A stretch of DNA of 64,000 nucleotides from Vitrella brassicaformis CCMP3155 (lineage: Eukaryota; Protista; Chromerida): positions 62,001 to 126,000 of the forward strand of contig CDMY01000254.1 of the NCBI GenBank assembly GCA_001179505.1, read 5' to 3'. The notes beneath the pieces are model-generated. The model did no database searches, was not told the DNA's origin, and saw only the letters and a program-made list of their open reading frames with translations. Below are positions 9,399-58,009 of the stretch, piece by piece. Position numbers and translations under genes: made by a program. Numbering within the stretch: the first letter of the stretch is position 1; each line of letters starts with the position of its first letter.

Positions 9399-10468
9399 AT
9401 GATTCGGAATTCGTTTTTCGCATCAGCTGCTGTATTGTCTTCTTGGGGGATCCTCCTCATGTTTATGACTCTCTGGCGATATCGAAGAACCCCGGCCATT
9501 GCAGACGAAGGAAGATCCAGCAGCAAGCGTGTCCCCCTTTCTGGTTTCCTTTCAGAGCGTGGTGATGAGAGAAGTTCGTGGCTTCCTCCAGTTCTTCTCT
9601 CCTCGATTGCTGATGGTCGAGGATTAATTGTCCTGACGACAACCAACTGCGGCATGGTGAGAGTTGGAACAGATTTTTGTTTGCAATGGCGAAATTCCCT
9701 CACGTCTTCGCTCCCGCCTATCAGGTCGACTTTGCCGTCAATTGGGCCAGGAGTGTCCAGAGACAGGGGATTGAAAACTTCCTGATTATCTGCCTCGACG
9801 ACAAATGTATGGAGATTCTAGTGCAGGTGTTCCCCCGCAATGTAGCCCGGGCTCCATCTGAGAGACAGCTTTCAGGGACCACTGTTGGGGCGGCAAAGCA
9901 TGGAAGCACAGGCTTTGCGGCTGTCGTTCAGACGAGACCCTTTTATATTCGGGAAGTGCTATCGAGGGGCTTCTCCGTCCTCTATAACGATGTTGATATC
10001 GTGTGGAGGAGGAGTGTTCTCCCATACATCGATGACAGCTATGATATGGCGGTCCAAATCGATAATACCGACCCAACGGACTATTGCACATGCATTATTT
10101 TCTTTCGGCCGACAGCGGCTTCTATCGTACTCGTGGATCGGTGGCAACAGATTATGAACGGCAACACGAACCCAAGAAAGAAGTCGTCGCGTCTCAATCA
10201 ACCATCGTTCAATCGAGCGATAAGGGAGATGAAGGGGAAGATGAAAATGAGGGTTCTTCCTCGGACACAGTTTCCTCCAGGCCGATACTTCTTCAATACG
10301 TCATACTCTCTTCCCACACATTCTTTGAGCCCATCAAAACGTGATGAGGTGGTCTGTGTGCATGCCAACTGGATGAAGGGTGCTGACGTGAAGCAAGACC
10401 AGCTGAGAAAGCATCAATTATGGGATGTTGACACAGGCCTGTCCAGTACATGTCTGCAGACTCGATGA
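9399..10468 (+). CDS. Nucleotide-diphospho-sugar transferase (GT77-like), type II membrane, paralog A
   Basis: N-terminal hydrophobic anchor. One intron (about 9657-9724) at TTNCGM|VDFAVNWA. Motifs VLYNDVDIVW (DxD), YCTCIIFFRPT, NQPSFN, FPPG and VHANWMKG. Confidence 0.85.
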
Positions 10469-11083
10469 TGAACGTTGTCTTTGTCGGAAGGCGACTGACT
10501 ATGAGTGCTGCAATCTCAATGCACAACTCAAAGGCGCATTTAATCAGTTGCGTGCCTCGGGCCTTGCTCTTCTTTTGTTTCAACTTCCGTCAGACTGCAT
10601 CCACGCGCCGCAGAAGGACAGACTCTCTGTCGGCCGTGCAGAATTGGTTGGAGACACGATGTGTCACCCTTGGAGACGAGCTTCTGACAGGTATAAAACG
10701 GATCTGCAGGGGTCTTGGTACCAGCGCTGTCTTGTACGGTGGATCTTGTTGCGTATCGTGCAAGGCCTTATTGTGAATTACGCGGAGTGTCTCCAATTTG
10801 CCCAATAAATACGAGAGGCACCGAAGGTGCCAAATCGCCGCAGGCAGGCCAGCCAGGGTGGCTCCGCGTCGGTCTGCAGTCTCACCGCCGGAGATGGTGA
10901 CGCGACATTGCACAAAGAAATTATTGGTCGAATTGTGCGCTTGACAGAGACATGAAGGTCTTTCACGATGTGTCGTGGGTACATTAATGACAGCCCTTAC
11001 AACATCAAGGGGGATTTTGTCGGCGAGTGTTTGTGTATTGGTGGAATCAACCCGGTGACGGCCCTTCGCATCATCGCAACAGC

Positions 11084-12408
11084 TTAGAGGCTCAGTTTTT
11101 GCCTGATCTTGAGTGTGGCGATCTCGCCTTCCTGCTCCTGGATCAACGCATCGATGCGAATCTCCAGCGAATTCTATTACGACGAGGCACACGAAGATGT
11201 CGCGAGAGACACGTTCATGTCTCTGCATACCCGTGTTTGTAGCAGAATACGGATGTCCTCTTCCGTCGACGAAAGCGCAGCCTCGATCGTCGAAAGCCAC
11301 GTCTTGAGCTTAGCGCATTCATCGGCGAGCATCGGTTCGATTGCCACACGGGGACGTCCACGAGAATTGCGCTACACGAAGGGAGCAGCAAGGCAAACAG
11401 ACCTTCCTGTGGATTTGTGCAGACAACTGTTTGCCTTGCTGCTCTCCGCGCATCGTTGAGCCACATCGATTCTCATCTTGAGCGATGAGAGGGCCTCAAC
11501 CATGCGCAGTCGCTCCCTCTGCAGCTCTGGACGCACGTGACTCATCGTCTCGTACATCTGTGCAATTATGTCCTTACCCTGAATGTCGACGGACACCTGT
11601 GCGTGTTCCTCCTGCAGTTTCATCCTTTGACGGCGGGCCTCCTCGATGTGACACTGGATGACGTTGTTGATGGAGGCGCCGAGGAGCCGCCTGAAATTCA
11701 ATGTGGTGGGTACATGTTCGTGATACATGACAAAAGTACGGTCAATGTTCGCAAACCTTTCACTTTCAATCTGCGCCCGTCTCCGGACTATTTCATGGCA
11801 ACGCCTGGAAGCCTGTTTTTCCAACGGTACAAGCACAAGCACAAGCACAAGCACAAGCATACACGGATGTCTGTGTATGTCGTCTCTACTTGAGTGCACA
11901 TCCGTCTTGTGTGACAGATGTGATTCTCCGTGGCCAGATCAGTGAACTGCAACCGAGCACACACGCACATACACACAAAGGAGAGCAAAAGATCCGCCTC
12001 ATGAACTTTGAAAGAAAAAAATCCCAACCTGAAAGTTCATGCGGCACTTCAAGCTCTGCGTTTTCGCCTTCGAATGGTGCGCCGCATTGACTGGAGCCGT
12101 ACATTACAGCAGACTGAGTGTGCTGTGTAAGACACTTGACACTTACAATAAGAGACTTGAATTGGCTGTTGGCTGCCAGCATCCTCGTCCCACCCATGCC
12201 ATCTGTGCGCGCACACACACGCGTACGCACGCAGTCCTTTTTGCATCTTATCTTGTTATGCATACGTGTGGTGAATCGGCGCCGGCTCTCTTCCTGCACC
12301 TGTTTGCTGTGTGTTCCCTTGCCCCTCTCGACCGTCGACGAGTTCAGCCGGCTGTACATCAAGCAAAGGAACGAACTCGGCAGGTTGGATGGGCGGAGCC
12401 TCGGCCAT
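11084..12408 (-). CDS. Hypothetical coiled-coil protein, multi-exon
   Basis: Exons joined by plausible GT-AG introns: MAEAPPIQPAEF..., IEEARRQRMKLQEEHAQV...LQRERLRMVEALSSLK, LKTWLSTIEAALSSTEEDIRILLQTR|NSLEIRIDALIQEQEGEIATLKIRQKLSL*. No family recognised. Confidence 0.55.
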
Positions 12409-15467: not shown

Positions 15468-15577
15468 TTTCTGTTCATGTCTCATGTTGTCGGCCAACAG
15501 AAGCATCGCTTTCTCTTCTTGATCAGTGGGAGCAGCTGATGGGACAAGGAGACAAGACGCAGTATTACTCACAACAA
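15468..15577 (+). pseudogene. Frameshifted GT77 exon relic, inverted copy of the segment at 20839-20949
   Basis: TTTCTGTTCATGTCTCATGTTGT--CGGCCAACAGAAGCATCGCTTTCTCTTCTTGATCAGTGGGAGCAGCTGATG aligns by eye to the GT77 domain FCSCLMLFRPTEGALSLLNQWEQLM, with a 2-nt deletion and a 1-nt insertion. Confidence 0.75.
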
Positions 15578-15735: not shown

Positions 15736-16709
15736 TCATTTGCATTCAGGGAGAATCATCGATTGTGGCACTCGCCATAGCCCGAAGCGTCTGAGTCGTT
15801 TCTTCTTTTTAACATGGCCTCTCACCCAGTTGGCGTGTACTACAACTACTTCGCTTCTCTGCTGGTTGCTCATTCGGTTGAAATACACATAGCCAGGGGG
15901 GAAGCGCTTGATAGGGCTGAGAATGTGTACAGACAGACCTTCTTGCAGCCTTTTGGCAGCCCGGTTGAACCCAGCTTGATTCTTGTTCTCTGCCTTCATC
16001 TCCTCTTCCCATACGTCGAGCAGCCTGAGGGAGTTCCTCGTGGGCCGAATCGCGAAAAAGCACGTGCACAAGTTCAGACTCTGGTCAGTCTTCCGAACGT
16101 CGTTCTGCACGACGAGGTCCTTGTCTCCGGGGAGAAAGGGTAATGGATTTTTCTGCCAGATCATGTCGACGTCACTGTACAAGGCAGTGTAGCCTTGTTG
16201 AAGGATCTCGCGAACAAAGAACGACCGCTTCTTGACAAGAGCACCGAAGCCCTCGCTGTTGAACGCGGATGCAGTCGTCGATATCATATTGTTCATCGTG
16301 GGTCCCTTGACAATGTGGTCTCCGTAATGGAGGTGGAGGTGCTTGAAACACGCGTTATCGCGGCAAATTATGATCCAATTGTGAATGTCGAGCTGCGACA
16401 GACTGATAGCCCAGTTGATAGCGAAATCGGCCTGCAGCTCAGAGACACGACATCAAGTATAACGCAACTTACCCGTTTACGACCCACCATGCCACAGTTC
16501 ACAGTTGTGAAGATAATCAATCTGCGAGAATCGGCAATTGATGAAAGCAGGTATGGAGAGAGCCAGTCAGAGGTGAAGTTCGAAGAGGACTTGTCGTCTG
16601 CGGTCCCCCCCTTGAGTGTGACTCCTAGCAACTTCTTCAGGGCGTCGTATGAAGCAAGCAGAAGTATGAATGCAAGGGCCGCAAAAATGAGGACACGTTT
16701 TAACGTCAT
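15736..16709 (-). CDS. Nucleotide-diphospho-sugar transferase (GT77-like), type II membrane, paralog B
   Basis: Anchor MTLKRVLIFAALAFILLLAS. Intron at TVNCGM|ADFAINWA. Motifs ALYSDVDMIW, LCTCFFAIRPT, NQAGFN, FPPG and VHANWVRG. Confidence 0.88.
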
Positions 16710-19912: not shown

Positions 19913-20055
19913 GAGTAAACGCGCGCGGGGATTGATCCCTCCTCCCCTTGAGCCTGTTTGAGTCTGCGTGCTGATGGGACTGTATTTGTATGAGTATCAC
20001 GGACACACAGACGAGTGTTACGGTTAATGACATTTCTCAATCGAGTAAACGCGCG
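19913..20055 (+). mobile_element. 117-bp 5'-truncated retroelement insertion (19926-20042) flanked by a 13-bp TSD GAGTAAACGCGCG
   Basis: 19925-20032 is identical to 40539-40646. TSD copies at 19913-19925 and 20043-20055. Confidence 0.85.
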
Positions 20056-20483: not shown

Positions 20484-23400
20484 TCACAAGCGAAGACGCA
20501 TAGCCACTTTAGTCACCTGGTTTTGGAATGTCGAGTGACCATGCAATAATGATACCACGTCGTTGTCCCACAACCGATGTTTTATCAAGGCCCTTTTCTT
20601 CGACTCACGACCTAATACCCAATTGACATGCACTATTACCACATCCTTCCGCTCCTCCCGTGTCAGAGACTCAGAGGGACGTCCGCGTCGCGTCTTCAAA
20701 AACACAGGACCTGCGGAACACGAAAGTATCCCAAAGACTGTTTCGAAAGACTCCTAACCTGATGGAAAAAATGCCGGAGAGAGACTTGCGATAGACACGC
20801 TGTTTCTCAGGTTTTTAACGGCTTCCTTCAGATATGGATTATTGTAAGTAATGTTGCGTCTTGTCTCCCTGTGCATCAGCTGCTCCCACTGATTGAGCAG
20901 AGAAAGCGCCCCCTCTGTTGGCCGAAACAACATCAGACACGAACAGAAATTAACCACGTCGATCTGGAGGGCGACGTCGAATCGCCTGGATGGCATATAC
21001 TCCAGCGCGTTCCTCAGCCACACCATGTCAACATCGTTGTACAGGACTGTGTAGCCTCTTTGGAGAATCTCGCGGACGAAGAATGGCCTCGTCATGACAA
21101 GAGCCCCGAACGACTCCGTGTTGAATATTGTGGCAGCCGCAGAGACACGCACCTCCTTCGGCGCGCGGACCACATTGTTGGGAAGGCTTTGAGACAGAAG
21201 ATCGAAGCATCCGTCGTCGAGGCAAACGATCAGGAAACTGCTAGCGCCTTGCCTCTGGAGGCTCTTTGCCCAGTTGATGGCGAAATCGACCTGCAAAGCA
21301 GAGGCCCCAGGTGGATGTCAAGACACTGAGACAAGTAAGTGTGAATGGCTAACCATGCCGTTGTTGACGGTCGTCATGACGATTGTGCCATCAGCATTAG
21401 CAACCGAAGATAGCAGGTCAGAGGAAAGCCACCCAGTTGAGGCCGGCATTGTCGTGCCGCTTCTCTTTTCACCAATTTCCCGTCCCTCTAGGTGACGTAC
21501 TTGCGCCGAGCACGAGTCAAGTGCATCTGCGTGCCGGCACCACATCCAGCAGTCGTTGCCCCCTTCTTTCCCCTTGCGCAGCACGACACCCCACATCGGA
21601 CCGAAGAGGCCCTCTGGGGAGCAGTCCGGCTGCTGCATCACAGGGATGACGTCGTGGATGTCGACGAGCTGACTGCACTGGAAGAGCCTCAAGAAGGCCG
21701 CAACGGCCTCCGTCCTGTTGGGTGGCAGCTTGACGGCAGAAGAAGAGCCGAACGGGCGGTAGGTGCCGCTGGGCAGGAGGAAGGCAGCGTAGCCGTTGGG
21801 ACGCAGGACCCTCTCCACCTCTGTCAAAAAGACACGCACACACGCACAAACGCAAAAATGAAGGCGATTGAAGGGTGACTCACCGGCAGCGTAGTGGAAT
21901 GTACAGTCTATGCGGTTGAAGACCTTGGCAAAGACAAAGTCGAAGGAGTCGTCTTTGAAGGGCAAGTCGTGCAAATCGCCCCTGACCACCAGTGGAGGCC
22001 TCTCCACCAGATCGACACCAATGGCGTACCGCACGCCGGCTTGGTACAATGCCCGCACCTCTTCCCCTGTTGACGCGCCAATGCTGAGGGCATGCGAGTC
22101 GCGCGTGATGTAGCCGGCAGACCAATAGCGATCAAACAATCGCACATGCATGTACCTACACCAACCACAGAAGTCAACACCTCGAGACAAAGAAGCGGCG
22201 TGCATACCTTATCCACTCGAGCATATCGACGGAGAGCTGTCCTGAAACGTCTTGCCCATCTGAAGCGCTTCTTCTGATGTAGGCGCCGTTCTCCTGTGTT
22301 GCGACGGATTCATTGTACGCCCTTCCATTCGCGAACGAACTGGCGTGGCTGCTGAGGGCAGACTGACACGTTTCCGTTGTATTTCGCGCTGCTTCCCGGC
22401 CGATGCTCTGCCGTTGGTTCAGTGGGAGGGAATCCATGATAAAGCAGCTGTCATTGGCGACACTGGGGCGCACGAGACGCTGAGCAACAAAGGAAGGCGT
22501 TTCTTGTGGACTCGTCTTTCGCTTGTCCGCCGTCCATATGTTTAAGCACTCGTCGGCCGCATCGTCGAGGTCGTGCGAAGCTGACATATTCCTAAGGAGA
22601 GGCGAGCCATTGGTGCGATGCTCTAATCTGCTATATCCCCAGCTGACCTTTGGGCAAAGTCAGTATGGAGAATATCAAGGAGGTCCAGCACGGGCCACTC
22701 TGAGACAAACAAGACATGCCAGCCGGCCAGCCAAGGCAGCAACAGCTAGCTCACCTGTGCTCAGTAAGGTCCGCAGAGGGATCTGCCTGATGATGTCTCT
22801 CAACGGATCCACGAGAATATCTCTCCTGTCGACATTTTGAATCATGGCTGCCGAGATGAGGGCCAGCGGGCACTTGTTGAAATAGCGAGAGGCGTCTTCG
22901 AGAAAGAGAGACACACTCTGCCTTTGAGCAACCAGATCCTCTGTGGGCCTCCGTGTACCTTTGGGGACCTCTTGGAGGAGTCGAGCCGCCTCATTTGCGC
23001 GCTCTTGCAGAAGGGCCGCTGGCGGCTGGCCACCATTGATTTGCTCTTGCCATGTGCTTACCAGTTCCATGAGAGAGCCGTGGAACGCTCGGAGTGCTGA
23101 AAAGTGGTGAAAGAGAGGACAGTCATACGAGTCAAGATCAGGAAGGCCCTCTTTCAACAGAGCAAGCATCCTTAACAAGAGAAAGAATACAAATGAGGGA
23201 AGACATCTGGCCCTCTGCGCTGACCTGAGAATCGGCCATGTTGTATTGAGTATGTGGGAAGCGAGACCCAACTTGTCGTACATCTCGTCGAGCTCAGCCA
23301 GGGTGTGGGACATGTACTGCTCGAGGGACGCGATGACAGCGTCATTCTGGGGCGGATGGACGGCAAAGAACAGGCGTGCCACGAAGACAACCACATAGCT

Positions 23401-23685
23401 GTCGGGTTCCCGTGACAGCGAGTTCCAGTCTGTTGACTCGACTTGCCGCAAAATCTTCGCACTTTCTCTTGCTGCGCATCGAAGGGACAGTTCTGTGTCA
23501 GCGAAATCAACAGCCTCTGATCGGATGTCAGCCTGATGACGGGCTCTACTGTGTTCCGGTCGCGAGGCTCGGTTGGGAAACAGCAGCTGGAGATGATCGT
23601 GGAGGAGTGAAACACGGAGAGATTGGTTGGCGCATGACGCCAGGGCTGCAGTGACGAGGACCACTCCGAGTTTGGCATACATCAT
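20484..23685 (-). CDS. Multidomain secretory-pathway protein: signal anchor + unknown helical domain + class I SAM methyltransferase + GT77 glycosyltransferase (paralog C)
   Basis: All junctions splice in frame with GT-AG introns: LSTE|WPVLD, FAQR|NMSASHD, LEWIR|YMHVRLFD, HYAA|EVERVLRP, TVNNGM|VDFAINWA and FPSG|PVFLK. MTase motif ALSIGASTGEEVRALYQAGVRYAIGVDLVERPPLVVRGDLHDLPFKDDSFDFVF. GT77 motifs VLYNDVDMVW, FCSCLMLFRPT and VHVNWVLG. Confidence 0.8.
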
Positions 23686-24818
23686 CTACATCATCTAAGC
23701 AAACATCCGTTTGTACGGAATCGGCTCGATATACGGCGATGTCTCCTGCTCGCCACTCTAGATCTGACTAGAGAGGGCCGGGCAGAAATGGGACCTATGG
23801 GTGGTTGAGAGTGGCTGCTGATCAGCTCGCGTCCATGCGCCCTCTGTGTGGCGCGGCAGATCTCCAACTGTCAGTCGGGCTAGCACAATTCACGATGGTG
23901 AGGGCGTGAGGGGATGATGCGACCCGCATGTTGATGAGCACTCTATGCCGGTGGTTTTGCATCCTGTGTGGTATCTTGGGTCGGATCAGCCGGTGCTTCC
24001 ATTGTCGTCTTGGCCTCGTCGTTGGGTCCCCCTGATTTATTGCAAGTCCATGCAGGATTCAGAGTCGTGTGAAAATACCTTTTTCTGATGTCCGTATCAG
24101 CAACCAGAGAAGGAATGAGGCGATGACAGTGAGAACGACTGTTGCTGACAGTGACGTTTTCATACAGACTGTGGCACATCAGTAACGAAGTGTCTCCGTT
24201 TGGATCCACCTTCACGCACCTAACGCCGCGAGTCTACCAACTCTTCTGGTATGCTCATGTCATTCCTACAACCGTCAACCATGCAATTCAAGTTATTCAA
24301 CTGAATTAACGTCACTGTCCCGATTTGTCGGTTGTAAAAATCGGTGGAAGATTGCTGTAGAAGAATTGCTTCCATTGCAATCCGACTCTGTCAACAACTA
24401 AGCGGTCTCTGTCGACAACGACCCTTCTGTCTCGAATTACGTAATTGATGTGTGACTCATTACTCGAGAGAAAAGAACTCCTACTCGTAAAGAATAAAAA
24501 CCATCGGTTTTACCGAATTACTAAGCTGGGACTTCGAGGCCAAGGTCCATTGTAAAAAACGCGGAAAACCCTGGCGCAAAACTCAACAAGGATTTCAACT
24601 GTCCTGTAGGACATGGTTTCCTTTCCCATTTATCTTCATCAGAACGTTCTCATGGTGTGCTTCTCGCCCTTCTCCGGTCGTTCGCTGCGGAGAAACAATT
24701 TCCTTAGGTCTTTTCTAGCCCATTTCTCGACACGAGACCGGTCCAGATCCACACACGAGCCCCGAACCCCTTTTTTACTGATCGGACCGCCCCTATGCGT
24801 ATGCATTAATGAAAGAAA

Positions 24819-27092
24819 GTGGCGTTTCCCGCTGCTTTTTCTGGGATGTCCAGCTTTGGCAGCCGCAGGATGCCCATTGCGCCAGCGTTGGCGCTCGCTG
24901 TTGCTGCTTCCGTCGTGTTTCTCTTTCGTCTGCGTTCGCTACCGGTCTGGGTCAGTCACTTAATGTGTCCGTCACCTGATGAGATTGCGGTGGCCATACG
25001 AGGCGCAATGGAGCGGACCACCCACGAGACAGAGCGATTGCACCATCCTCTCGATCTGTACAAGAATTTGAGGTGTCTGAGGGCACTCATGCCGAGAGAA
25101 TGGACAGTGTGGGAATCTGCGCCGTACTACGGTGCGAATGTTTCGGTTCGCTCGACAAGCGAGGCGTCCAGAAGGGCAGATGCGTTGTTTCCCGTCAGCT
25201 TCCGTCCAGGGCAATTCAAGCCTTGGCTTGACTTTTTGGATTCGGTGCTTGCCGATGTTAGCCTGTCCTTTGCTGACGACAATGCCTTTCTCGAGAGGCA
25301 CGGGGCTTTTGGTGTCATTGAGGGGTACTGCCGTCATGGCTACTTCAAATACGGTAAAACCCATGACTTTCTCGGGTGCATTTGCGTGATGGTCACATGT
25401 CCACCCCTATGGATTGGCGATTTATTTATCGTGCAGGACAGTTCTGCACGGAGTACTGGATCCCCTTTCTCTTGCAGACACTTCGTATAGCCGGCAAGAA
25501 AGTGGTCACCGACTGCGACAAAGCTGACTTTATAGTGTCTTGGTATTTTCAGAAGGTAAAGAAGAATAAGCGGCTTATTGATGCAGTCAAATGGGATGAT
25601 AAGTTTTACTACTTATGCTCCTCTAACGTCCCTAGATGCTGAGAAAGAACAAGGTAATAAGGTAGGCTGCCGTGTATTTCTTATTCGCCTTTCGTACAGG
25701 TGTTTCGCCCTGGTGCCATGTGGAGGGGTGTAAGCTCTTCCAATCCACAGGGGCATCGCCAATTTCTGCAACGATGGCCAGAAAATTGCGAAAGAAGTTC
25801 GTTAATGAGCCGTCTCGTTTCTGGTTTATTCTAAGCAGTGGCCAGATCAAGTAAGTCTTACTGTTCAGCTCAGGCACCCACCTAGAAGTATATTTGGCAT
25901 CTGATCAAGTTTTGGTGCTTGAAGGCTCTACGTCAACAAAGCCTTCATGCACCTGACGCCGCGAGTCTCGAAATTTGCAGTGGAGGGCACCAACAAGGAT
26001 ATCCGGTTCTCACGAAGCAACGCGGTACTTGCGGTACTTGTCCCCATAGTAAGTCTGTTTGCGTGTGTGTGTGGCTGCAGATCATAATCCCCGGCTACGT
26101 GCAACTTGCAGAGAGACAGCGAATTATTGGGATGACAGATCATACGCCCCTAAACGATTCCAACAATGCCAGTTCAGTTCGTCGACCCCTTCTGTTTGTC
26201 TACTGTGGGCACTTCCGGAGGAACGAGGAGAGGAGGTATTTGAAGAAACTTATCGAGTTGAAGCAAATCAGACAAGATGGCCAGAAGGTGTATGTGGGCC
26301 ACTGCAAGGTGGGGGCGTGGCAATACACTGCATGAGAAAGCGAGGCGCGAAGAGCCGAGCATCACAAGCCATGCAAAGGCGCACAATGGACTGTCATGCA
26401 GATAAAAGACTTTGTTACGCGGCTGGTCTCAAGCAAATACTGCGGCACTCCTCGCGGAAACACTCCCTGGACCTCGCGGTTTTACAAGAGCCTCGTGGCC
26501 CTCTGTGTGCCCGTGCTATTCTCGCGCTCCTTCCTCCTGCCCTTCCGGCACCTGAGTGAGTCAACGGATAAAGGCATCAAGGGGACCTGGTTTTTATGTC
26601 CGTTTTGCGTTTAGTTCCGTGGCACAGGTGGGATTTCCCATTCAAATGCACACACAAGCGGCCACCACACACGGCTGGTATAGTCGCGTTCATGATTAAG
26701 CAACTGTTGTGTGGTGTCTCACCTGGGCAGAGTCGTGGTGTATCGCGAGATGAAGAGAAGCGACGGAAGTATCAAAAAAGCGCATGAGTTTTGGTCTGAC
26801 CTTGTCCAGAGAGAGCATGAGCTTCACGAAAGGCGGCAATGGATGAGGTCAACTAGTCTCCAATACATCCTTACACTCACAGTAATACTTACATTTGTGG
26901 CTGCCTTTGTGTTTGTGCAGAACCATACGGCCGTACATTGTGCCCTCGTGCAGACCAGATGATTGTTCTGCAGCCAAACCGTACAGTTCCCTACTTGTAC
27001 TCGAGCTCAGATTGCTGAAGTTGCAAATGTTTTTAAGGGTCCCCATGGAAAACTTGATGACTTTTCTAATGCATCTATTCTTGAGAACTTGA
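24819..27092 (+). CDS. Exostosin-family (GT47) glycosyltransferase, type II membrane; 3' end approximate
   Basis: Anchor PALALAVAASVVFLF. Exons GQFCTEYWI, CDKADFIVSWY and IIIPGYV, plus the hallmark SSKYCGTPRGNTPWTSRFYKSLVALCVPVLFSRSFLLPF. Confidence 0.8.
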
Positions 27093-32005: not shown

Positions 32006-32108
32006 CTCAGCCTGTGTGACCAATGTGAATTTGTGTAGGCGCATGCTAATTAATGTGTGCTGACGGTCTGTTGGGCCTGTTGGTTGTTGCTGACGGTCTG
32101 ATTTTAAT

Positions 32109-34143: not shown

Positions 34144-36551
34144 TCACTCAATATCATTGTTTGGATCGTTGAGACGACGATGAGACAGGACGTTCGTATT
34201 GCCCAGCCAGCCACCACTCTCTGAGATCCTTGAGCTGCTCTTGGTGCTGGTCGGCCACTTGCTCGGTGCCGTCCCAGCAGAAGCTGCAACGACGCCTGGA
34301 ACGGACGTTGAATTAAAACACGTGATGTCACACGAGATTTCTTCCCACCTTAGCGGCCCCCTCATTCCGCTCTTCTGTCTGCGTTGTCGTCCTGCTGTCC
34401 TGAAGCTGCTCTCCTCCATACATGTGCACGCTCTGTCGGGGAGGTCCACGTCTCTGGACGCTGTCGCTGATGTTAGGTCACGGTAGGCCAGGAGCACAGC
34501 ATGCCAGTACTCTCGCAGCGCCGACGCAGACATATATTCGCGGAAGAACGACAAGGCGTTATCTGAAACGCATGGCCGCAATGTGCCGCCTGTCAAAGCA
34601 GTACAGATTACCTGCCAGGCGCTTGGCCTCATGGTCGTTGTCTCGCAGCCATTCCACCTGCAGGAAAAGACAGACAGAGGGAGGCCGTCCGATGTCCCAC
34701 GTCCTCAGCAATGTGTTACGTACCACTTCGGTGACATTATTTTCGTCGACGATGAGATACTCGTGGCCCGGGCGAGCCGCGGCGTAGAAGAACTCAATGG
34801 CGGGATTCGCCCACCTCAAAACAGTCGCACCTAATGGGGTACGTCATTATACATCATGTCGTCCGGTGTGACTTACGGAAGTGCTGTTTTCGTCTCACCA
34901 AGTCCCATGATGTGTTGCAGGTGTCTAGAGTATGTGTTGGCGAGCTTGCCGGGCATCGACAACACGTATTTGAAGTCCGCAACATGCGAAATGTTTGCTG
35001 AACTGCCAAGGACTTCTCCGCTCGACACGCGAACGAGGTCTTCGTCGCTGAACATGTGCAAATCAGCCTATAAGATAAAAGTTTGCGGACGTTGCACACC
35101 GGTGTCTTGCACTATTTGCCTGCCCACCCATTGTTTGATGACATCGGCGTTTGGCTGCTGTCCGTCCACCCAGGCGACATCGAACACATCTTGCCGACGC
35201 GACGCCGTCAACACCAACTTAGCACGTTCAATGCCACTGAAATACGGACTGAACAACGAATGCGCATGGACAAGCGTGCAGGCAATCCAGAGCCAGACGT
35301 TGTTTTTACCCGCATGTTCCCCGGTAGAATGCCTTGGTCGTTCTCCTTTGCCATGGGTGCGACACGGCGAGCCGCATCAGCTCCTCCGCCCTGTCGCCCC
35401 ACAGAGGCTGCATGATGTATCGCTGGCCCTCGGTAGTGTTAGACGCAGACGTGAGAGCACCGAAATAGATATTCGGTGTCAAGATGCACCCTGCAGATGA
35501 CAGGCACATGACACGAAATATCTTGTGCATGTCCGGCCTACCTGGCATTTCCTGCATGCGTTTGACTGGGTCATCGCGCGTCGATCGCGTCATGCACAGG
35601 GCGGGGAGGGCCTTCCAGTTGAGGGAGTAGCGCTTCGTGTGCACCTCCTGGTGACGGTGGTAGTGTAGGTGCCCATGAGTCCTCCTCACACGAGCCCGCA
35701 TACGCCTCAGGCTGACCCTGTGACTCGGCCCATGTGCGCTGGTTCGCGTCGCGTTGGTGGCCAGCAGGACTGTGTCAGAGCCCCCTTTGCCAGCATGCTG
35801 CTCATTGTCGGATCTCAGGTAGCAGTTGCGTCCTACGATCGAAAAGCCGATGAACAGAGGCGTTCTGTCCGTCTGGTATCAAGTCGAATACCATCTTGTG
35901 TCGGGTCGAAGAGGAACATCATGTCAGGGAAATCATACTGCAAAACACGCAGACGCATGACCGTCATGTGATGGATCTTATTCATTCAGCTGCCTATGTA
36001 CCTCTTGCACAAGACTTCGCATTGTTTCGTCAAACAGGGTGAACCTGAATATCTGGTTGCCGTAGAAGTCGTGCACCTGACGGCGAGAGTCACTTCGGAG
36101 ACCAGTGGATATGCGTATTCATGTCGCTTCTTCAGTCACCTTAGAGTCAGGCAGATAGTAGATCCCTCCCTACCATGCCCACATTGCACCATCCCCGCAA
36201 CGGGCATGAAGTTGCACGTTGCGCCGTTTGCGTGTACCTTATAGATGTAGACCGCCGCATGCTGACCTGTCCGCGTCCCTGTAAGACAACAGCACGGAGG
36301 CAACAGATCATCCCCTTCTTTCCGTAAATCACCGCAGTATTCCAGGTCATCCTGTGAGATTTCCGCGGATGCAGATGAACGGAATGGGTGGATCTGCTGG
36401 TGAATCTCCTCGTCAAGTACGTGCCTACATCACTCAGTCATATCCATTCCGTCGCGTCCGTTTGTCCTCCCACCTCATTCTTTCCTTACCAGGCCGGATG
36501 GGCAGTGACGAGGCCTAAGCCTATGAATGCAATCGTGAGAAGTCGACTCAT
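34144..36551 (-). CDS. GT90 (CAP10/POGLUT-like) glycosyltransferase with signal peptide
   Basis: MSRLLTIAFIGLGLVTAHPAW|HVLDEEIHQQIHPF. Exons ADFKYVLSMPG...TYSRHL, WANPAIEFFYAAARPGHEYLIV, VEWLRDNDHEAKRLA|DNALSFFREYMSASALREYWHAVLLAY. Confidence 0.75.
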
Positions 36552-45004: not shown

Positions 45005-45304
45005 NNNNNNNNNNNNNNNNNNNNNNNNNNNNNNNNNNNNNNNNNNNNNNNNNNNNNNNNNNNNNNNNNNNNNNNNNNNNNNNNNNNNNNNNNNNNNNNN
45101 NNNNNNNNNNNNNNNNNNNNNNNNNNNNNNNNNNNNNNNNNNNNNNNNNNNNNNNNNNNNNNNNNNNNNNNNNNNNNNNNNNNNNNNNNNNNNNNNNNNN
45201 NNNNNNNNNNNNNNNNNNNNNNNNNNNNNNNNNNNNNNNNNNNNNNNNNNNNNNNNNNNNNNNNNNNNNNNNNNNNNNNNNNNNNNNNNNNNNNNNNNNN
45301 NNNN
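45005..45304. other. Assembly gap (300 N) flanked by poly-G
   Basis: Direct reading. Confidence 0.99.
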
Positions 45305-46168: not shown

Positions 46169-46468
46169 NNNNNNNNNNNNNNNNNNNNNNNNNNNNNNNN
46201 NNNNNNNNNNNNNNNNNNNNNNNNNNNNNNNNNNNNNNNNNNNNNNNNNNNNNNNNNNNNNNNNNNNNNNNNNNNNNNNNNNNNNNNNNNNNNNNNNNNN
46301 NNNNNNNNNNNNNNNNNNNNNNNNNNNNNNNNNNNNNNNNNNNNNNNNNNNNNNNNNNNNNNNNNNNNNNNNNNNNNNNNNNNNNNNNNNNNNNNNNNNN
46401 NNNNNNNNNNNNNNNNNNNNNNNNNNNNNNNNNNNNNNNNNNNNNNNNNNNNNNNNNNNNNNNNNNNN
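46169..46468. other. Assembly gap (300 N) flanked by poly-C
   Basis: Direct reading. Confidence 0.99.
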
Positions 46469-46927: not shown

Positions 46928-47956
46928 ATGAGTTTTCCACTCCCCTCATCCCCACTCGCTCAGTGGGTGGGCACCAGGAGATTGTCTTTCTTCATTGGGA
47001 GTGGTACGGAGGGGGGGTAAACAGACCAGAACACGAATGCACTTCTCCATGTATTATCTGTGTCAGTGGTGCTTCTTTTTCTGCTTCCGAAGATGTGGCT
47101 ATTGTTGTTGAGGTGCCGGTCTGCCATAAAGCCGGAGGAGACCAATGCGCTGCGTGGCGCCTTCTCGTCAATCTACAGTTCGGCCAAATGGGGGAGGAAC
47201 AAGGACGGGAAGGGGCACAGCGGCGCGGGCAGCACCGAGGAGGCAACAGACAACTTTCGCCTGTTGCTGGAGGACTTTCTGCGACAGCGAAACATCAGGT
47301 CTGTCGTTGATGCGGGATGCGGCGACTGGTACAACAGAGACAGACAGACAGACAGACAGAGCACAGAGCCCCGCCCGCCATGCACGTCTATGTGCATTGC
47401 ATTGCAGGGAGTGGACACAGTTTGTGGATTGGCGTCCCGTAGAGGAATACACAGGTGTGGATGTGGTGCCGTCCGTCATTGCTCGCAATCAGGACTTGTA
47501 TAGCAGCCACAACAGGACTTTCCACGCGAGGAGCATCTTGAAAAGGGACAACCTGCCTCCTGCAGACGTGAAGAACCGACAGAAGAAGACCAATTACCAC
47601 ACATAACCTCTCTTTCCGGCTTCATTCTGTTGCAGCTGTTGATGTCCAAGGATGTGTTGCAGCACCTGCCTACACCGATGGTACACCAATTCATTGCGAA
47701 CCACCTCAGTGCTCACGACGGCCGATACAAGTACAAGTATGCCCTCTTGACTAACGATAGATGCAACGTGACAAGATTGCATCGCCGCTGCGTGGACAAT
47801 CGGGACCTGGGCCAGCCAGGCGGCTGGCGCGAGGTGAATCTGGCTCTCCCGCCCTTCTCTCTGCCGGCGTTTGACTTCTATCGGTGGCCTCACCATTGGT
47901 GGGATGACAACGAAAGGGAGAAGGTCACGGTGCTGATGGACTTCACTAGGGTATAG
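46928..47956 (+). CDS. Type II membrane class I SAM-dependent methyltransferase (bacterial-like family)
   Basis: MSFPLPSSPLAQWVGTRRLSFFIGS|VVLLFLLPKMWLLLL anchor. FSSIYSSAKWG...SGAGST...RSVVDAGCGDW|EW, YTGVDVV and LLMSKDVLQHLP. Three GT-AG introns restore the frame. Confidence 0.82.
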
Positions 47957-53103: not shown

Positions 53104-54532
53104 TCATCCCTTTGTCTTGGTACTCAGCCACCTGTGTGTCCACTCTGGCTTGTTCAGCTCGCGCCTCATCCCAACCACCAGCGATGAAAAGGTCTACCGG
53201 GGTGTCCCGACAAAAAAAAAACGCAATTCGCCGTTTAGTATTGTGACACACGTAAGTATTGTCGTGAGGTATATCCATTTCTGACCGATTGTCTGTTCAA
53301 CGGCGAGCCTGTACAAAGGGATACTGCACTGCTTCAGCATCTTCCCGCTACACCCCAGGATAGTGGCTGGCGGCAATGTCCGGCGCAGCTGTGCGAGATC
53401 ACCTAAACCCATATCAGTCATGACAAACACGCCCTTGGGTCTCAGTTCCAGCCATGCTGTGATCCCCTTGAGGATGTCCGGGATTGAGCCGGCCTTTCTT
53501 CAAGTTCGCAATTCATGCGCACACACAGACACACACAGAGCAGATAAACACAGCGGAAGCACGGCGACTTTCTTTATGCTCTGTTTACATGTCTCCGTGC
53601 CAAATATGAAAGCAGGCGATTGAATTACCAGGAGTCACGGTCAGCTTGTCGAGCAGCTGGCGTGGGGCCTTGTCGACCTCATGCCTGAAGTGCACAACTT
53701 TTCGCGGGCAAGCGGGACGAGGGCCAAAGAAAGCCAGTAAGCCCCTAAATGCGACGAGTGGACAGAATCAGTGCGAACAGTCACATCTATGTCATGTCTC
53801 ACCTGGCGGCAACAATTGAGAAGTTGTTTTCCCTCATCAACCGTTCGATTCCGTCGCGAGACTCAATTGTACGTAGGGATCCCGGCTGCGTCCAACGGAT
53901 AGTCTCATCCATGCCTCGCTCTGTCCAGTCAGTAGGCACTGGAACGCGTCCGTGTGTCTCAGAACTTTATGTGGGCTGCTCATTGCCAAGCCGCTCGTGA
54001 ACAAGCCGGCGTGGTACCATGGCCTCACCAGGCAGTCCGCTGACCACCGGGCTGGGTCTCGCCATTGTGCACCCATGGACGAGAGGCGACCAGAGAAGAA
54101 CAGTGCTAGCTGGGGATCCGCAGCCGCATGATCCTCAAAACAACAACTTGACAACGAGAACAACGATCCCCAGTATTCAGTGCTTCTGCACTGAATTTTT
54201 GGGTTGACCTGCATCCACTGCTCGTTCAACGCCCAGCTGACGCCCATGCCTGGGCTACCCATTGGGCAAATGAGAAGAGCGCGGCGCGAAATCTGACAAT
54301 AGGCAGCGAGCGACTGTTACACACTTGGTACCTGTGCAATGTCAAGGTTGTTTGTGCGATTGGTATACCTTCCTCGTGGGCTGTACGCCATCGCGTGGGT
54401 CGTGTCAAGCAGCGGCTTGGATTTGTTTGTTCGGCGCTTGTCGGACAGAGCCTTCTCCGGCGACACGGCTGTCTGCGTCGACAGCCAAAAGATGCAGATG
54501 ACAGCCCAGATAGAGAAAGCAAGACGGGACAT
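53104..54532 (-). CDS. O-fucosyltransferase-like (POFUT/GT65-GT68 fold) type II protein with an in-frame TAG at 53194-53196
   Basis: Anchor MSRLAFSIWAVICIFWL. Motifs AYSPRGRYTNRTNNLDIAQ|ISRRALLICP, VVHFRHEVD, VFVMTD and LAVEQTI...FFVGTPR*TFSSLVVGMRRELNKP. Confidence 0.6.
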
Positions 54533-55168: not shown

Positions 55169-56527
55169 TTAAAAGGAGACGCTTCCGCTGTTTTCTTGTC
55201 CCAGGAAGTGAGCGCTGGTACGCCATAAATTGTCAATGTGCGTCTCCGTTAACTGTGGCAAATTCAATCGGTGGCTCGTCCCGTCTTGGTCACTTTCCTC
55301 TTCTTCGACAAGACGCGCCACGTGGAGGCCGTGGTAAGTCTCCTGCTGGTCGCCTTCTTGCTCTTGCTCATCCTCCGCGACATCGGTAATGTCGGCATTC
55401 TCATTGAAGTAATCGCCCACGTCTAGCTTCGACCGCAAGGGAGGCCACAAGGTACAGTCTGGCCGATAGTACGAGAGCCATAAGCACACATCATGCGCAC
55501 GCAATCTCCACGGCTTCTGCCGACCGCTATAATGTAAGATGCGAGTCTTGGCTAGCCGGCCCATGGTGAAGCTGCGCTGGGCACACCACAGAGAGTTCCA
55601 TGTCTCATCGAGCGCCGCGAAGCCCCATTTATGAGCCAGAATCGAGAATGGCAGAGAGAATGCTTCTTCGAGATATATTCCTTTCCCCTGCGTCGCATGA
55701 TGGCCCCGTAGATGGTGTATAATGCTTTCAGCGGCAAAAATCAAATTCAGCGCTCGCCAAGCTGACAAGTTAGCAACAAATACCTGCAGACAAAGGTATA
55801 TTATCATTGCCATTCGCATATAAGCATCGTATCATCATTCACGGAGACCCCAGGATTGAGAAGACGCGATGCCGATGGATCAATCCTCAGCTGCCGACAG
55901 ATACGTTCTCCTCTCGTATGAAACGCATCCTTCAGCAGTGGCGAATCCGACTGGATAGGCACAGCAAGCGCATTTTGGCCGGCTCTTGCGAGTCGAAATG
56001 CCCCGCCTCCTCCCAGCCTTATCTGCTGCGGTCGTCCAAGTGCAGCGAGCCCTTCATCGTAGAGCTGTCCAATATCGGCTCCGGCCAGTATATCCGTGTC
56101 AAGCCACAACACAACTGAGCAGGATGGCAGGAGCTCAGGCAAATACAATCGCAAGAAGTTCATATGTGTTTGAGGAAGCCGTCCATGAGCGATGCGGATC
56201 AATGAGGAGGGAAGCAGGGAATGCTCGCCTTCACCAGGGTCACGGAGCTCAATCTCATGGAAAGTGACAGATGGCTGGCTCCCCGGGTGAGTGAGTCCGG
56301 CTGTGTAGCATCTGTATGCGCTTGCGACGGACGCAGATAGAGACGCGGGGATGAACAAATGAAAATGCAGGTCTTCAGGCGTTTGTGAATGGTAAACAAC
56401 GGACGCAAGCGTCACCAGGATCCCAGCCAGATGGTCATGCGTAGCTGTCACAAACAATAATAATACTCCCGTGCAATTTTTCAATCACTGTCTCACCTGC
56501 CATGGCAATTTGTACAGTGCCAGCCAT
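55169..56527 (-). CDS. GT8 (GATL/galacturonosyltransferase-like) glycosyltransferase
   Basis: MAGTVQIAMA|ATHDHLAGILVTLASVVYHS, NFLRLYLPELLP, VLWLDTDIL (DxD), LLNPG|VFVANLSAWR, LDETWN and ILHYSGRQKPW. Confidence 0.85.
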
Positions 56528-56678
56528 TCGGGGCAGGAGCGATTCAAGTCTTGCTCACGTGTGAGGCAAGTTTACAGCATGGGTAAACTTCGCTTGCTTC
56601 TTTGCAACAACGCGTGTGTGGCCCCCCGCGCATCGTTACACATCAATCATCTGTAGTCTGTACAGCGTAGTGTTGCAC

Positions 56679-58009
56679 ATGAAAACGTCAGTGTCAGCAC
56701 TGGTCGTTCTCACTGGCGTCGCCTCATTCCTTTTCTGGTTACGGACATCAGAAAAAGGTACGAAAGGATCTCCTGCTCAGCGCCTACTGTGGCTGCTGTG
56801 TGTGCTTTTCTCTGCTTGTCTCCGGCCAGTCACCTTATCACGAACCTCGTTCCCAAGGCGATACCTCATCGACGACTACTGACCGTTGCGGTCGGGAGGT
56901 GAGAAGAGACAGGGACGAAAAAGACGGTTTCATATAGGAGAGAGATGCTCACACAATTACTGCAGGGCAGGGTCGTGCCCTGAGAAGTGCCTGTTCATCC
57001 ATCGTTATCTCCCGGAGTGGGTCAGGTAACAAGAGACAGGCTGCGAGTCGATATCCAAGGGTCTTTCGTTCAGATATCGGATTGTCGAATACGGTGACAT
57101 CAGCGAATTGGAGAGTCAGCTCCAGCATGACAGTACGGATGTCATCATCGTCGCAAGGAACACCTCTGACCTCTCCATCTCACGCCTTGGGGAGTGCGCT
57201 CAACGACGCAAAGAGAAAGGCTCGTCGGTTGGTCTCTACCACATGGCAGACATCGGCAACAGCGGCTTCGGGCGGGACTACGGCGAATTTGATTATGTGA
57301 TACGGATGCACTACTTTTCTAGGCTGCGTCGTGCCGCTACAGGACTGTTTCTGTATTCCCTGTCGAATCTGACCTGCTCACGATCAAATGGACCTGATGG
57401 ATGGCCGCCAGTATTGAAAGGTGACAAGGACGACCGTTTCATCCCTAGACTGTCCACTGGCAGCTTCTGCCGCCTGGCTTTCCGGCCGACATGTACGACA
57501 GAGAAGGCTATTCAGCTTGGCCTGCTTCCATGCGGAAATACGACTGCACATTCGTCGGCTGGCCAAGGACACACGGTAGCAGAATACTCTTGTCCGCGCT
57601 AAAGAAGCACCCTTTCGGCAGGCGGCTCAAGTGTCATTTATCTGTGCAGAGAAAGTTTAGACGAGAAATCGGGCCCTATTCTTACCAAGTTCACTACTTG
57701 TCCACAAGCAAGATCGGTTTCTGCCCAAGGGGAACAGGTCCTGAAACAATGCGTTTTGCTGAGGTCCTCGGCGCCGGAACAGTTCCTGCCATGCTGCCCT
57801 CGAACTTTCATTCGGTGACTTTTTCTCGATTTCCCGGCGTCATCGCAAGCTCGTGGCCGAAAGTGTTTGCGAAGATTGGCGAGCTCCTCAAGGATCCAGA
57901 GAGGCTAGACGAGGTCCAAGAGGAATGTGTGAAGTGGTACAGGAGACTGCGCGAGTGCGAAAGGGCCGGAATAGATGTGCTCCTGAGACACGCTTTGACG
58001 GACAAATGA
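56679..58009 (+). CDS. Exostosin/GT47-like glycosyltransferase, type II membrane
   Basis: Anchor MKTSVSALVVLTGVASFLFWL. Exons LYHMAD...DYVIRMHY and RKYDCTFVG, plus the hallmark SKIGFCPRGTGPETMRFAEVLGAGTVPAML. Confidence 0.72.

What the first reader, a model, noticed from the sequence alone, without database searches (positions are those of the whole stretch)
9399..58009. Glycan-biosynthesis-rich neighbourhood: 9 glycosyltransferases + 2 methyltransferase modules in about 49 kb
Seen: GT77 x3 (9399, 15736, 20484), GT47 x2 (24819, 56679), GT10 (32109), GT90 (34144), GT8 (55169), an O-FucT-like gene (53104), a GT77 relic, a fused MTase and a stand-alone type II MTase (46928). That is about 10 of roughly 23 genes, from six unrelated GT families, nearly all with secretory anchors. 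Known: GT77, GT47, GT8 and GT90 build wall and glycoprotein glycans in plants, algae and fungi. Tandem duplication alone cannot explain co-location of unrelated families. Inference: a loose eukaryotic gene cluster for a fucosylated, O-methylated surface or cyst-wall glycan.
Basis: partly seen in the sequence, partly recalled or inferred. Interest (0 to 1): 0.75.

Follow-up and report, generated by a model that had tools for sequence, protein, structure and literature searches.

The report
Glycosyltransferase gene island in Vitrella
A scaffold of the coral-associated alga Vitrella brassicaformis holds far more genes for sugar-chain-building and sugar-methylating enzymes than chance allows, drawn from several unrelated enzyme families, but nothing yet shows that they build one product together.

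Summary
Between 9.4 and 58.0 kb I find three GT77 genes, a 110-nt GT77 relic, one GT47, one divergent GT47/RXYLT1-like gene, one GT10 fucosyltransferase, one GT8, a fused MTase-GT77 gene and a stand-alone class I MTase.

Two calls are weaker. The GT90 gene rests only on five collinear motif matches. The O-FucT-like gene is a true homologue of an intact Vitrella O-FucT protein, but it has an in-frame TAG inside a conserved motif and is probably broken.

The two assembly gaps lie in homopolymer-flanked DNA where I found no gene, and touch no claimed gene.

The island continues past the window to the scaffold end, with two more GT8, one GT47 and a Methyltransf_24. The scan had already followed up that adjoining stretch (s1-226957) and noted other GT clusters on other contigs of this genome.

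Nine of 42 genome-wide loci of the six named families lie within 65 kb. In 200,000 random placements no 65-kb span held more than 5 loci, and four or more families co-occurred 13 times.

The island grew by old tandem duplication, a segmental duplication shared with contig C411, and reuse of one signal-anchor exon by unrelated families. One GT77 gene is transcribed.

A shared product (fucosylated, O-methylated wall glycan) is plausible but untested. I found no shared promoter motif, and synteny could not be tested.

The parts
9399..10468 (+). GT77 gene 1: signal-anchor exon, then catalytic exon
   Evidence: PF03407 109.6 bits at w9767-10405. The anchor MIRNSFFASAAVLSSWGILLMF and the ...TTNCGM|gt donor are seen.
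15468..15577 (+). GT77 relic (fragment copy of a GT77 gene 3 exon)
   Evidence: 84% nt identity over 110 nt to w20839-20949. tblastn with the GT77 exons also finds it.
15736..16709 (-). GT77 gene 2, expressed, type II membrane protein of 305 aa
   Evidence: PF03407 110.9 bits. The MMETSP transcript protein P0004 is 100% identical and complete, and confirms the anchor exon and the splice after NCGM.
20484..23685 (-). Helical domain + class I MTase + GT77 fusion gene (GT77 gene 3)
   Evidence: Methyltransf_11 38.1 bits and PF03407 91.2 bits. The MTase and the first GT77 strand (ADGTIVMTTVNNGM) share one exon, w21354-22208. The 63-nt and 48-nt in-frame GT-AG introns carry the apparent stops. A full paralogue lies at C411:30017-33232.
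24079..24163 (-). Signal-anchor first exon (MKTSLSATVVLTVIASFLLWLLIRTSEK), copy A
   Evidence: 85% nt identity to w56679-56760, with similarity ending at the ATG region and the GT donor. 95% identity over 210 nt to C254:129556-129765.
24819..26611 (+). GT47 (exostosin) gene, transcribed divergently from the fusion gene
   Evidence: PF03016 52.6 bits at w26147-26548. The in-frame TGA lies in a 93-nt GT-AG intron, w26309-26401. The anchor is MSSFGSRRMPIAPALALAVAASVVFLF.
32104..33937 (-). GT10 alpha-1,3-fucosyltransferase-type gene
   Evidence: PF00852 78.5 bits and 19.8 bits on the next exon. Motif FKFHLALENSDTPDYVTEKF. Best PDB relatives are core alpha-1,3-FucT A (9s6a, E 1.6e-11) and FUT9. The anchor is MRGAPPPAVLLVAALIASLLIPF.
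34144..35353 (-). GT90-like gene (weak support)
   Evidence: Five collinear weak matches to the genome's own GT90 ORFs: WQRRTTKAFYRGT, FKYVLSMPG, EFFYAAARPGHEYLIV, VEWLRDNDHEAKRLAGN, ALSFFREY..YWHAVLLAYRDL. An HMM built from the genome's own GT90 genes ranks w34562-34843- first of 1060 window ORFs (10.5 bits, E 0.026). hhalign E 3e-4. No Pfam hit.
45005..45304 (.). Assembly gap 1 (300 N)
   Evidence: A poly-G run precedes it and GGGGG follows it. The flanking ORF has no Pfam family. No claimed gene is involved.
46169..46468 (.). Assembly gap 2 (300 N)
   Evidence: Poly-C runs on both sides. It lies 460 nt upstream of the MTase ATG.
46928..47956 (+). Stand-alone class I SAM methyltransferase with an N-terminal anchor, at least 4 exons
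   Evidence: Motifs VVDAGCGDW, YTGVDVV and LLMSKDVLQHL. Paralogues on C405 (83%), C361, C435 and C417. The C417 single-exon ORF passes Methyltransf_11 at 22.1 bits against a cut-off of 21.2.
53104..54532 (-). O-FucT-like gene, probably a pseudogene
   Evidence: tblastn of P0003 (PF10250, 39.4 bits): residues 80-193 match w54370-53999 (E 1.6e-14) and residues 317-413 match w53490-53137 (E 5.6e-9). A TAG at w53194-53196 replaces the Ser of the FIGT.GSTF motif, and no HxRRxDW block was found.
55169..56484 (-). GT8 gene (no anchor exon located)
   Evidence: PF01501 34.6 and 19.6 bits on two exons. Motifs WLDTDIL and HYSGRQKPW. A paralogue lies at C254:132896-133879 (53.9 bits).
56679..58009 (+). 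GT47/RXYLT1-like gene, divergent from the GT8 gene; its first exon (w56679-56757) is anchor copy B
   Evidence: RXYLT1_C 24.7 bits, below the cut-off. BLASTP to the GT47 beyond the window's end (C254:136248-136985) gives E 1e-4, and to the w26402-26556 GT47 exon E 8e-6. The anchor exon is described.

Best explanation
This is a real, non-random island of Golgi-type glycan-modifying genes on Vitrella brassicaformis scaffold C254. It runs from about 71 kb to the scaffold end at 147.6 kb, and the window covers its first two thirds.

Content: at least 12 glycosyltransferase-type genes from six or seven CAZy-type families (GT77 x3, GT47 x2 plus one GT47-like, GT8 x3, GT10, GT90-like, O-FucT-like) and three methyltransferase modules. 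Ordinary housekeeping genes are interspersed, and there are a few broken copies.

Shown:
- The island was built over a long time by tandem duplication, giving three deeply diverged GT77 genes that share one intron position.
- A block was duplicated to or from contig C411 (the MTase-GT77 gene plus an O-FucT gene).
- One 26-28-codon signal-anchor first exon was copied onto catalytic domains of unrelated folds.
- Most of the genes encode type II membrane proteins.
- One GT77 gene is transcribed and spliced as modelled.

Inferred:
- The enzymes work in the secretory pathway on wall or secreted glycoconjugates.
- At least the tightly paired genes act on the same chains. These pairs are MTase-GT77 with GT47, GT10 with GT90-like, and GT8 with GT47-like.
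- The products probably carry fucose, added by GT10, and O-methylated pentose or hexose caps. The methyl caps follow from the MTase being fused to a GT77.

A single common product for the whole island is possible but not demonstrated.
For: Enrichment:
- Genome-wide six-frame Pfam scans give 42 loci for the six named families. Nine of them, from four families, lie within C254:71767-136775.
- In 200,000 uniform placements no 65-kb span held more than 5 loci. Four or more families co-occurred 13 times, or 8 times after collapsing paralogues.

Intact genes:
- The apparent internal stops lie in 48-, 63- and 93-nt in-frame GT-AG introns.
- Catalytic motifs are present in GT10, GT8 and GT77.

Expression: the transcript-derived protein P0004 equals GT77 gene 2.

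Anchors.

Shared anchor exon: three copies, all on C254, at 85-95% identity, with similarity bounded by the ATG region and the splice donor.

Fusion: the MTase and the start of the GT77 domain lie in one exon.

Duplication history:
- GT77 tree.
- C411 paralogous block.
- GT77 relic.
- Broken O-FucT-like copy against intact, expressed P0003.

Extension beyond the window: GT8 x2, GT47 and Methyltransf_24.

Precedents for co-operation:
- GT77 and GT47 enzymes act in one pathway in extensin arabinosylation (PMC5371791).
- PBCV-1 A064R is a GT-GT-MTase protein (PMC7826918).

Wall chemistry: the wall of the sister alga Chromera contains terminal Fuc, Xyl, Gal and Ara as minor sugars (PMC9293442).
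Against: - No evidence of co-regulation. No upstream k-mer is shared by the eight start regions beyond what random window segments give.
- Housekeeping genes split the island into four sub-clusters.
- One member is broken, and two (GT90-like, GT47-like) fall below family thresholds.
- Earlier notes report other GT clusters in this genome. Clustering may therefore reflect how this genome duplicates genes, not selection for a pathway.
- No glycan data exist for Vitrella.
- The families tested were chosen after seeing the window, so the p-value is post hoc. It is, however, very small.
Confidence: 0.6

Rival explanations
1. Duplication-prone gene nursery without a shared function. The region accumulates glycan-enzyme genes because local and segmental duplication and exon shuffling are frequent here. 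The enzymes serve unrelated glycans, and their proximity is historical, not selected.
For: - A GT77 relic and a 95% identical duplicate of the anchor exon plus intron.
- A broken O-FucT-like copy.
- A degenerate helical-domain copy at C254:14344-15053.
- A paralogous block on C411.
- Interspersed housekeeping genes.
- No shared promoter k-mer.
- Other GT clusters noted in the genome.
Against: - Duplication explains several copies of one family. It does not explain why six or seven unrelated families meet here.
- The three GT77 genes are deeply diverged yet still linked.
- The MTase-GT77 and O-FucT genes are linked in both paralogous blocks.
- Unrelated catalytic domains share one anchor exon, which fits a shared cellular address.
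Confidence: 0.3
2. Chance co-location: the GT genes are no denser here than expected from the genome background.
For: The families were picked after the fact, and the Pfam exon-wise counts are lower bounds (tool caveat).
Against: Nine loci lie in 65 kb, against a simulated maximum of 5 in 200,000 trials. Four families co-occurred in 13 of 200,000 trials. No other contig carries two of these families within 65 kb.
Confidence: 0.01
3. Foreign island: a block of glycan genes acquired from a giant virus or a bacterium and later domesticated.
For: Giant viruses carry multi-domain GT and MTase genes for unusual fucose-, xylose- and methyl-sugar-rich glycans (PMC7826918). The GT77 genes have no close non-Vitrella relatives in the word-based protein search.
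Against: - Spliceosomal GT-AG introns, one at a position shared by all three GT77 genes.
- Host-like, even G+C of 0.49-0.59 across the window, outside the two bins that hold the gaps.
- Eukaryotic type II anchors.
- Housekeeping genes in between.
- No relatives in 2.9 million viral contigs for the GT77 or the MTase exon.
Confidence: 0.04

Closest known systems
Fungal galactosaminogalactan (GAG) five-gene cluster of Aspergillus and Metarhizium (PMC8224951)
   Same: A eukaryotic chromosomal cluster of non-homologous genes devoted to one extracellular glycan.
   Different: The GAG cluster is compact (five adjacent genes), co-regulated, conserved across species and genetically proven. The Vitrella island is about 75 kb, is interrupted by housekeeping genes, contains paralogues and broken copies, and has no functional or expression evidence.
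Plant extensin Hyp-arabinosylation pathway (RRA1-3 and XEG113 of GT77, ExAD of GT47; PMC5371791)
   Same: GT77 and GT47 type II Golgi enzymes extend one glycoprotein side chain step by step. The same two families sit side by side here.
   Different: The plant genes are dispersed, not clustered. No assignment of the Vitrella GT77 or GT47 genes to those clades was made. Arabinose is only 1 mol% of the wall of the sister alga Chromera (PMC9293442).
Chlorovirus PBCV-1 glycan enzymes A064R (GT-GT-MTase) and A111/114R (PMC7826918)
   Same: Glycosyltransferase and sugar O-methyltransferase domains are joined in one polypeptide. They build fucose- and xylose-containing, methyl-capped glycans.
   Different: Viral, intronless, soluble proteins of other GT families. 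The Vitrella fusion has the order helical domain, MTase, GT77, carries introns, and has a nuclear paralogue on C411. No sequence relatives were found in viral contigs.
Adjoining and other GT clusters noted by this scan in the same genome (s1-226957, s1-231044, s1-231158)
   Same: The same organism and the same theme: unrelated GT and MTase genes side by side, broken copies, and shared N-terminal modules.
   Different: s1-226957 is the physical continuation of this island (C254:129.6-146.9 kb). The other two are on other contigs, and I did not examine them.

Membership tests
GT77 (Pfam PF03407 Nucleotid_trans) | Domain match above the curated cut-off (22 bits) | tested here: met
   109.6, 110.9 and 91.2 bits for the three genes.
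GT77 (Pfam PF03407 Nucleotid_trans) | DxD metal/nucleotide-sugar motif and type II anchor in a complete product | tested here: met
   P0004 (transcript-derived, 305 aa) has the anchor MTLKRVLIFAALAFILLLA and the motif YSDVDMIW.
GT47 (PF03016 Exostosin_GT47) | Domain match above the cut-off (33.4 bits) | tested here: met
   w26147-26548: 52.6 bits. The internal TGA lies in a 93-nt intron.
GT47 (PF03016), gene at w56679-58009 | Domain match above the cut-off | tested here: not met
   No PF03016 hit. RXYLT1_C scores 24.7 bits, below its cut-off of 27. Pairwise similarity to true GT47 genes gives E 1e-4 and 8e-6. I file it as GT47-like, not as a member.
GT10 (PF00852) | Domain match above the cut-off (23.9 bits) and the alpha-1,3-FucT motif FxLxFENSxxxDYVTEK | tested here: met
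   78.5 bits. Motif FKFHLALENSDTPDYVTEKF. PDB relatives are fucosyltransferases.
GT8 (PF01501) | Domain match above the cut-off (24.3 bits), DxD motif and HxxGxxKPW motif | tested here: met
   34.6 bits on the first exon. Motifs WLDTDIL and HYSGRQKPW. No N-terminal anchor exon was located.
GT90 (PF05686) | Domain match above the cut-off (24 bits) | tested here: not met
   No hit on C254 even at E <= 10, and none exon by exon. Only five collinear weak matches to the genome's own GT90 genes. The spliced model was not joined, by rule, so the whole-protein test was not run.
O-FucT superfamily (PF10250) | Domain match above the cut-off (31.5 bits), or homology to a member that passes it | tested here: inconclusive
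   The exons give no Pfam hit. They match P0003 collinearly (E 1.6e-14 and 5.6e-9), and P0003 passes at 39.4 bits.
O-FucT superfamily (PF10250) | Uninterrupted reading frame through the conserved C-terminal FIGT.GSTF block and presence of the HxRRxDW block | tested here: not met
   TAG at w53194-53196 inside the motif. No HxRRxDW equivalent was found in any frame.
Class I SAM methyltransferase (Methyltransf_11 and relatives) | Domain match above the cut-off (21.2 bits) | tested here: met
   Fused module: 38.1 bits. Stand-alone gene: met only through its C417 paralogue (22.1 bits; paralogy E 1.7e-9). Motif I VVDAGCGDW was read directly.
Eukaryotic biosynthetic gene cluster (functional sense) | Non-homologous genes of one process physically linked beyond chance | tested here: met
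   Simulation. Families.
Eukaryotic biosynthetic gene cluster (functional sense) | Co-expression or common regulation | tested here: inconclusive
   Only a k-mer test of eight upstream regions was run, and it gave no excess over random segments. No expression data were available.
Eukaryotic biosynthetic gene cluster (functional sense) | Conserved linkage in related species; a common product | not testable with these tools
The genome collections hold no chromerid relatives. No Vitrella glycan data were found.

The most novel reading that the evidence does not exclude
The island is a true alveolate glycan-biosynthesis gene cluster. Its enzymes are co-expressed at wall or sporangium formation. 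They are sent to the same Golgi cisterna, in part through a shared, shuffled signal-anchor exon. Together they assemble one complex fucosylated side chain with methylated pentose caps, and the MTase-GT77 fusion adds and methylates the terminal sugar in one step. This would be a eukaryotic counterpart of bacterial polysaccharide loci and of the chlorovirus glycan machinery.
Probability: 0.25. Interest if true: 0.75.

Novelty: new variant of a known kind. Interest (0 to 1): 0.5.

Why it matters
Outside fungi and plant specialised metabolism, clusters of unrelated genes for one pathway are rare in eukaryotes. None is described for glycan synthesis in alveolates, the group that includes the apicomplexan parasites with their cyst and oocyst walls.

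If the island is functional, it gives a ready-made candidate list for how chromerids decorate their largely cellulosic walls. It also offers a natural example of domain and exon shuffling creating new Golgi enzymes: the MTase-GT77 fusion, and one anchor exon on unrelated catalytic folds.

If it is only a duplication hotspot, it still shows how this genome generates glycan-enzyme diversity.

Tried and rejected
- Exon-wise Pfam scans of the GT90-like, O-FucT-like and stand-alone MTase exons gave nothing, even at E <= 10.
- PDB sequence searches of the same exons gave nothing useful.
- ESM Atlas look-ups of two exons gave no usable hit.
- tblastx against the genome's own GT90 and O-FucT loci gave nothing at E <= 0.01.
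- No paralogue of the GT90-like exons exists in the genome.
- About 50 further ORFs were scanned. Only a DEAD helicase, PRPP synthetase, a Myb gene and NOMO1-like domains appeared.
- Viral-contig scans for relatives of the GT77 and MTase exons were empty.
- The upstream k-mer test showed no enrichment.
- Rfam found no family in the window.
No synteny or gene-call context could be fetched.
- Spliced models were searched exon by exon only.
- The reading that the stops inside GT77 gene 3 and the GT47 gene mark pseudogenes was considered and rejected. They lie in short in-frame GT-AG introns.
- The reading of w33389-34105 as GT90 was rejected. It is an anchor exon that most likely belongs to the GT10 gene.
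- The large HMMER search and the structure predictions were not used. No claim here rests on absence of relatives or on a fold.

Full report
**Where this is.** The window is G000:C254:62001-126000 of a 72.7-Mb genome in 1064 contigs. Window coordinates (w) are C254 coordinates minus 62000. Proteins encoded here are held in public collections as Vitrella brassicaformis CCMP3155. The genes have spliceosomal introns. For that reason every family test was run exon by exon, by reference.

**Assembly gaps.** Both gaps (w45005-45304 and w46169-46468) are 300 N. Gap 1 follows a poly-G run and is followed by GGGGG. Gap 2 has poly-C on both sides. This is typical of read failure at homopolymers. The DNA around and between the gaps showed no recognisable gene, and the ORFs that abut them have no Pfam family. 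No claimed gene touches a gap. The nearest is the MTase, whose ATG is 460 nt downstream of gap 2. Continuity and the orientation of the 864-nt piece between the gaps cannot be verified, but they do not bear on the finding.

**Checking each claimed gene.**

- **GT77 x3.** Six-frame Pfam scans of the whole genome place three of the genome's six GT77 hits in the window: w9767-10405+ (109.6 bits), w15793-16383- (110.9 bits) and w20592-21242- (91.2 bits).
- **GT47.** PF03016 at w26147-26548+ (52.6 bits).
- **GT10.** PF00852 at w32417-32830- (78.5 bits). It carries the canonical FKFHLALENSDTPDYVTEKF motif. Its best solved relatives are alpha-1,3-fucosyltransferases.
- **GT8.** Two exons, 34.6 and 19.6 bits, with the DxD and HYSGRQKPW motifs.
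- **Apparent stops.** The stops inside GT77 gene 3 and the GT47 gene lie in short in-frame GT-AG introns of 48, 63 and 93 nt. These genes are not broken.
- **Fused MTase.** It scores 38.1 bits for Methyltransf_11. The same exon (w21354-22208) runs on into the first strand of the GT77 fold, ADGTIVMTTVNNGM. The fusion is therefore physical.
- **GT77 relic.** w15468-15577, 84% identical to part of GT77 gene 3.
- **Second 'GT47' (w56679-58009).** It reaches only RXYLT1_C at 24.7 bits, below the cut-off. It aligns to both true GT47 genes over the FC.PRG...R..E..G.VP block. The true GT47 beyond the window also gives a weak RXYLT1_C hit. I call this gene GT47-like.
- **Stand-alone MTase (w46928-47956).** No exon-level Pfam hit. 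It shows motif I, VVDAGCGDW. It has four paralogues in the genome. The single-exon paralogue on C417 passes Methyltransf_11.
- **O-FucT-like gene (w53104-54532-).** It is collinearly homologous to P0003, an intact, transcript-supported Vitrella protein encoded on C411 that passes PF10250. The window copy has a TAG at w53194-53196 exactly where the conserved Ser of FIGT.GSTF should be. I could not find the HxRRxDW block in any frame. It is probably a decayed duplicate.
- **GT90 (w34144-35353-).** This is the weakest call. There is no Pfam hit on the scaffold even at E <= 10 and no paralogue. Five short matches to the genome's own GT90 genes lie in the correct order on the minus strand. An HMM built from those genes ranks one of these exons first among 1060 window ORFs.
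- **w33389-34105-.**

**Signal anchors.** Type II anchors were read for GT77 genes 1 and 2, GT47, GT10, the O-FucT-like gene, the MTase and the GT47-like gene. I found none for GT8 or the GT90-like gene. For GT77 gene 2, the transcript-derived protein P0004 (305 aa, complete) confirms both the anchor exon and the splice after NCGM. This also shows the gene is expressed. The NCBI model P0005 is truncated.

**Extent.** The island does not stop at 58 kb. Beyond the window, C254 carries:

- two more GT8 genes (C254:132896-133879+ and about 134937-136076-);
- a strong GT47 (C254:136248-136985-, 97 bits);
- a Methyltransf_24 (C254:143455-143988+);
- a third copy of the anchor exon.

The scaffold ends at 147,631 without telomeric repeats. 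The scan had already followed up that adjoining stretch (s1-226957) and had noted other GT clusters on other contigs.

**Genes in between.** Inside the window the GT genes are separated by a DEAD-box helicase, PRPP synthetase, a Myb gene, a NOMO1-like gene and several unassigned ORFs.

Nine of them, from four families, lie within 65 kb of C254. In 200,000 uniform placements no 65-kb span held more than 5 loci. Four or more families co-occurred 13 times, or 8 times after collapsing the local paralogues. No other contig holds two of these families within that distance, and GT2 adds none on C254. The families were chosen after seeing the window, and the counts are lower bounds. Even so, the excess is very large.

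**How it arose.**

- The three GT77 genes share an intron position and sit on deep branches of the tree. This indicates old tandem duplication.
- The whole helical-domain + MTase + GT77 gene has a 71-84% identical paralogue at C411:30017-33232. The intact O-FucT gene (P0003) lies 34 kb from it. Small collinear matches lie in between. Part of the island and C411:30-68 kb therefore look like an old segmental duplication in which the MTase-GT77 and O-FucT linkage was kept.
- One 79-85-nt first exon, MKTS[VL]SA..VLT..ASFL.W..RTSEK, occurs three times in the genome, all on C254. One copy is on the minus strand, 390 nt upstream of the ORF that opens the MTase-GT77 gene. One is the first exon of the GT47-like gene. 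One lies in the stretch beyond the window. Similarity stops at the ATG region and at the splice donor for the 85% pair. Unrelated catalytic folds have thus received the same membrane anchor by exon duplication.

**What it does.** Established knowledge of the families and the anchors place these enzymes in the secretory pathway. GT10 members are alpha-1,3/4-fucosyltransferases. GT77 and GT47 enzymes co-operate on extensin side chains (PMC5371791). A GT-GT-MTase protein builds and methyl-caps a viral glycan (PMC7826918). An MTase fused to a GT77 is best explained as a sugar O-methyltransferase. The wall of the sister alga Chromera is about 80% glucose, with Gal, Xyl, Man, Fuc and Ara as minor sugars (PMC9293442). 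Nothing is published for Vitrella.

A single common product, a wall location and co-regulation are not shown. A k-mer test of eight upstream regions found nothing beyond random expectation. A foreign origin is unlikely, given the introns, even G+C, interspersed housekeeping genes and empty viral searches.

**Verdict.** The island is real and non-random, and it is larger than described. It was built by duplication and exon shuffling. Its unity of function remains a hypothesis, to which I give roughly one chance in four for the whole island and a higher chance for the adjacent gene pairs.

Noticed in passing
window 56608-56652: A 42-45-nt sequence just upstream of the GT47-like gene's ATG recurs at 90-98% identity on at least 17 other contigs. 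It matches no Rfam family. It may be a dispersed promoter or 5'-UTR element, or a short mobile element.
   Followed up: partly
C411:30017-33232 and C411:66868-67578 (loci L023, L027): A full paralogue of the helical-domain + MTase + GT77 gene (71-84% aa identity). The intact, expressed O-FucT gene (P0003) lies 34 kb away, with small collinear matches to w44-49 kb in between. This looks like an old segmental duplication of part of the island.
   Followed up: partly
C254:14344-15053 (47 kb before the window start): A degenerate copy of the 336-aa helical domain of the fusion gene, 62-85% identical and carrying TGA stops.
   Followed up: no
window 20710-20757, 21291-21353, 26309-26401: Very short in-frame GT-AG introns of 48, 63 and 93 nt that each carry a stop codon. 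In six-frame scans they look like nonsense mutations.
   Followed up: yes
window 15736-16709: The public NCBI gene model for GT77 gene 2 (P0005, 250 aa) lacks the anchor exon and has a wrong 3' end, compared with the transcript-derived protein P0004 (305 aa).
   Followed up: yes
window 40539-40651 and 19925-20036: A 113-nt direct repeat at 99% identity, 20 kb apart. Its nature is unknown.
   Followed up: no
C254:146254-146543 and C254:131057-131350 (loci L003, L001): A 294-nt inverted repeat at 93% identity brackets the stretch of the island beyond the window.
   Followed up: no
window 58648-63874: A multi-exon NOMO1-like gene (BOS complex subunit, beta-sandwich repeats) directly follows the GT47-like gene.
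   Followed up: no
G000:C348:99190-102786: A tandem array of three GT2 hits. This is a same-family cluster elsewhere in the genome.
   Followed up: no
window 55169-56484: The GT8 gene has intact catalytic motifs. No start codon or anchor exon was found in the 195 nt that separate it from the divergent GT47-like gene. Its 5' end is unresolved.
   Followed up: partly
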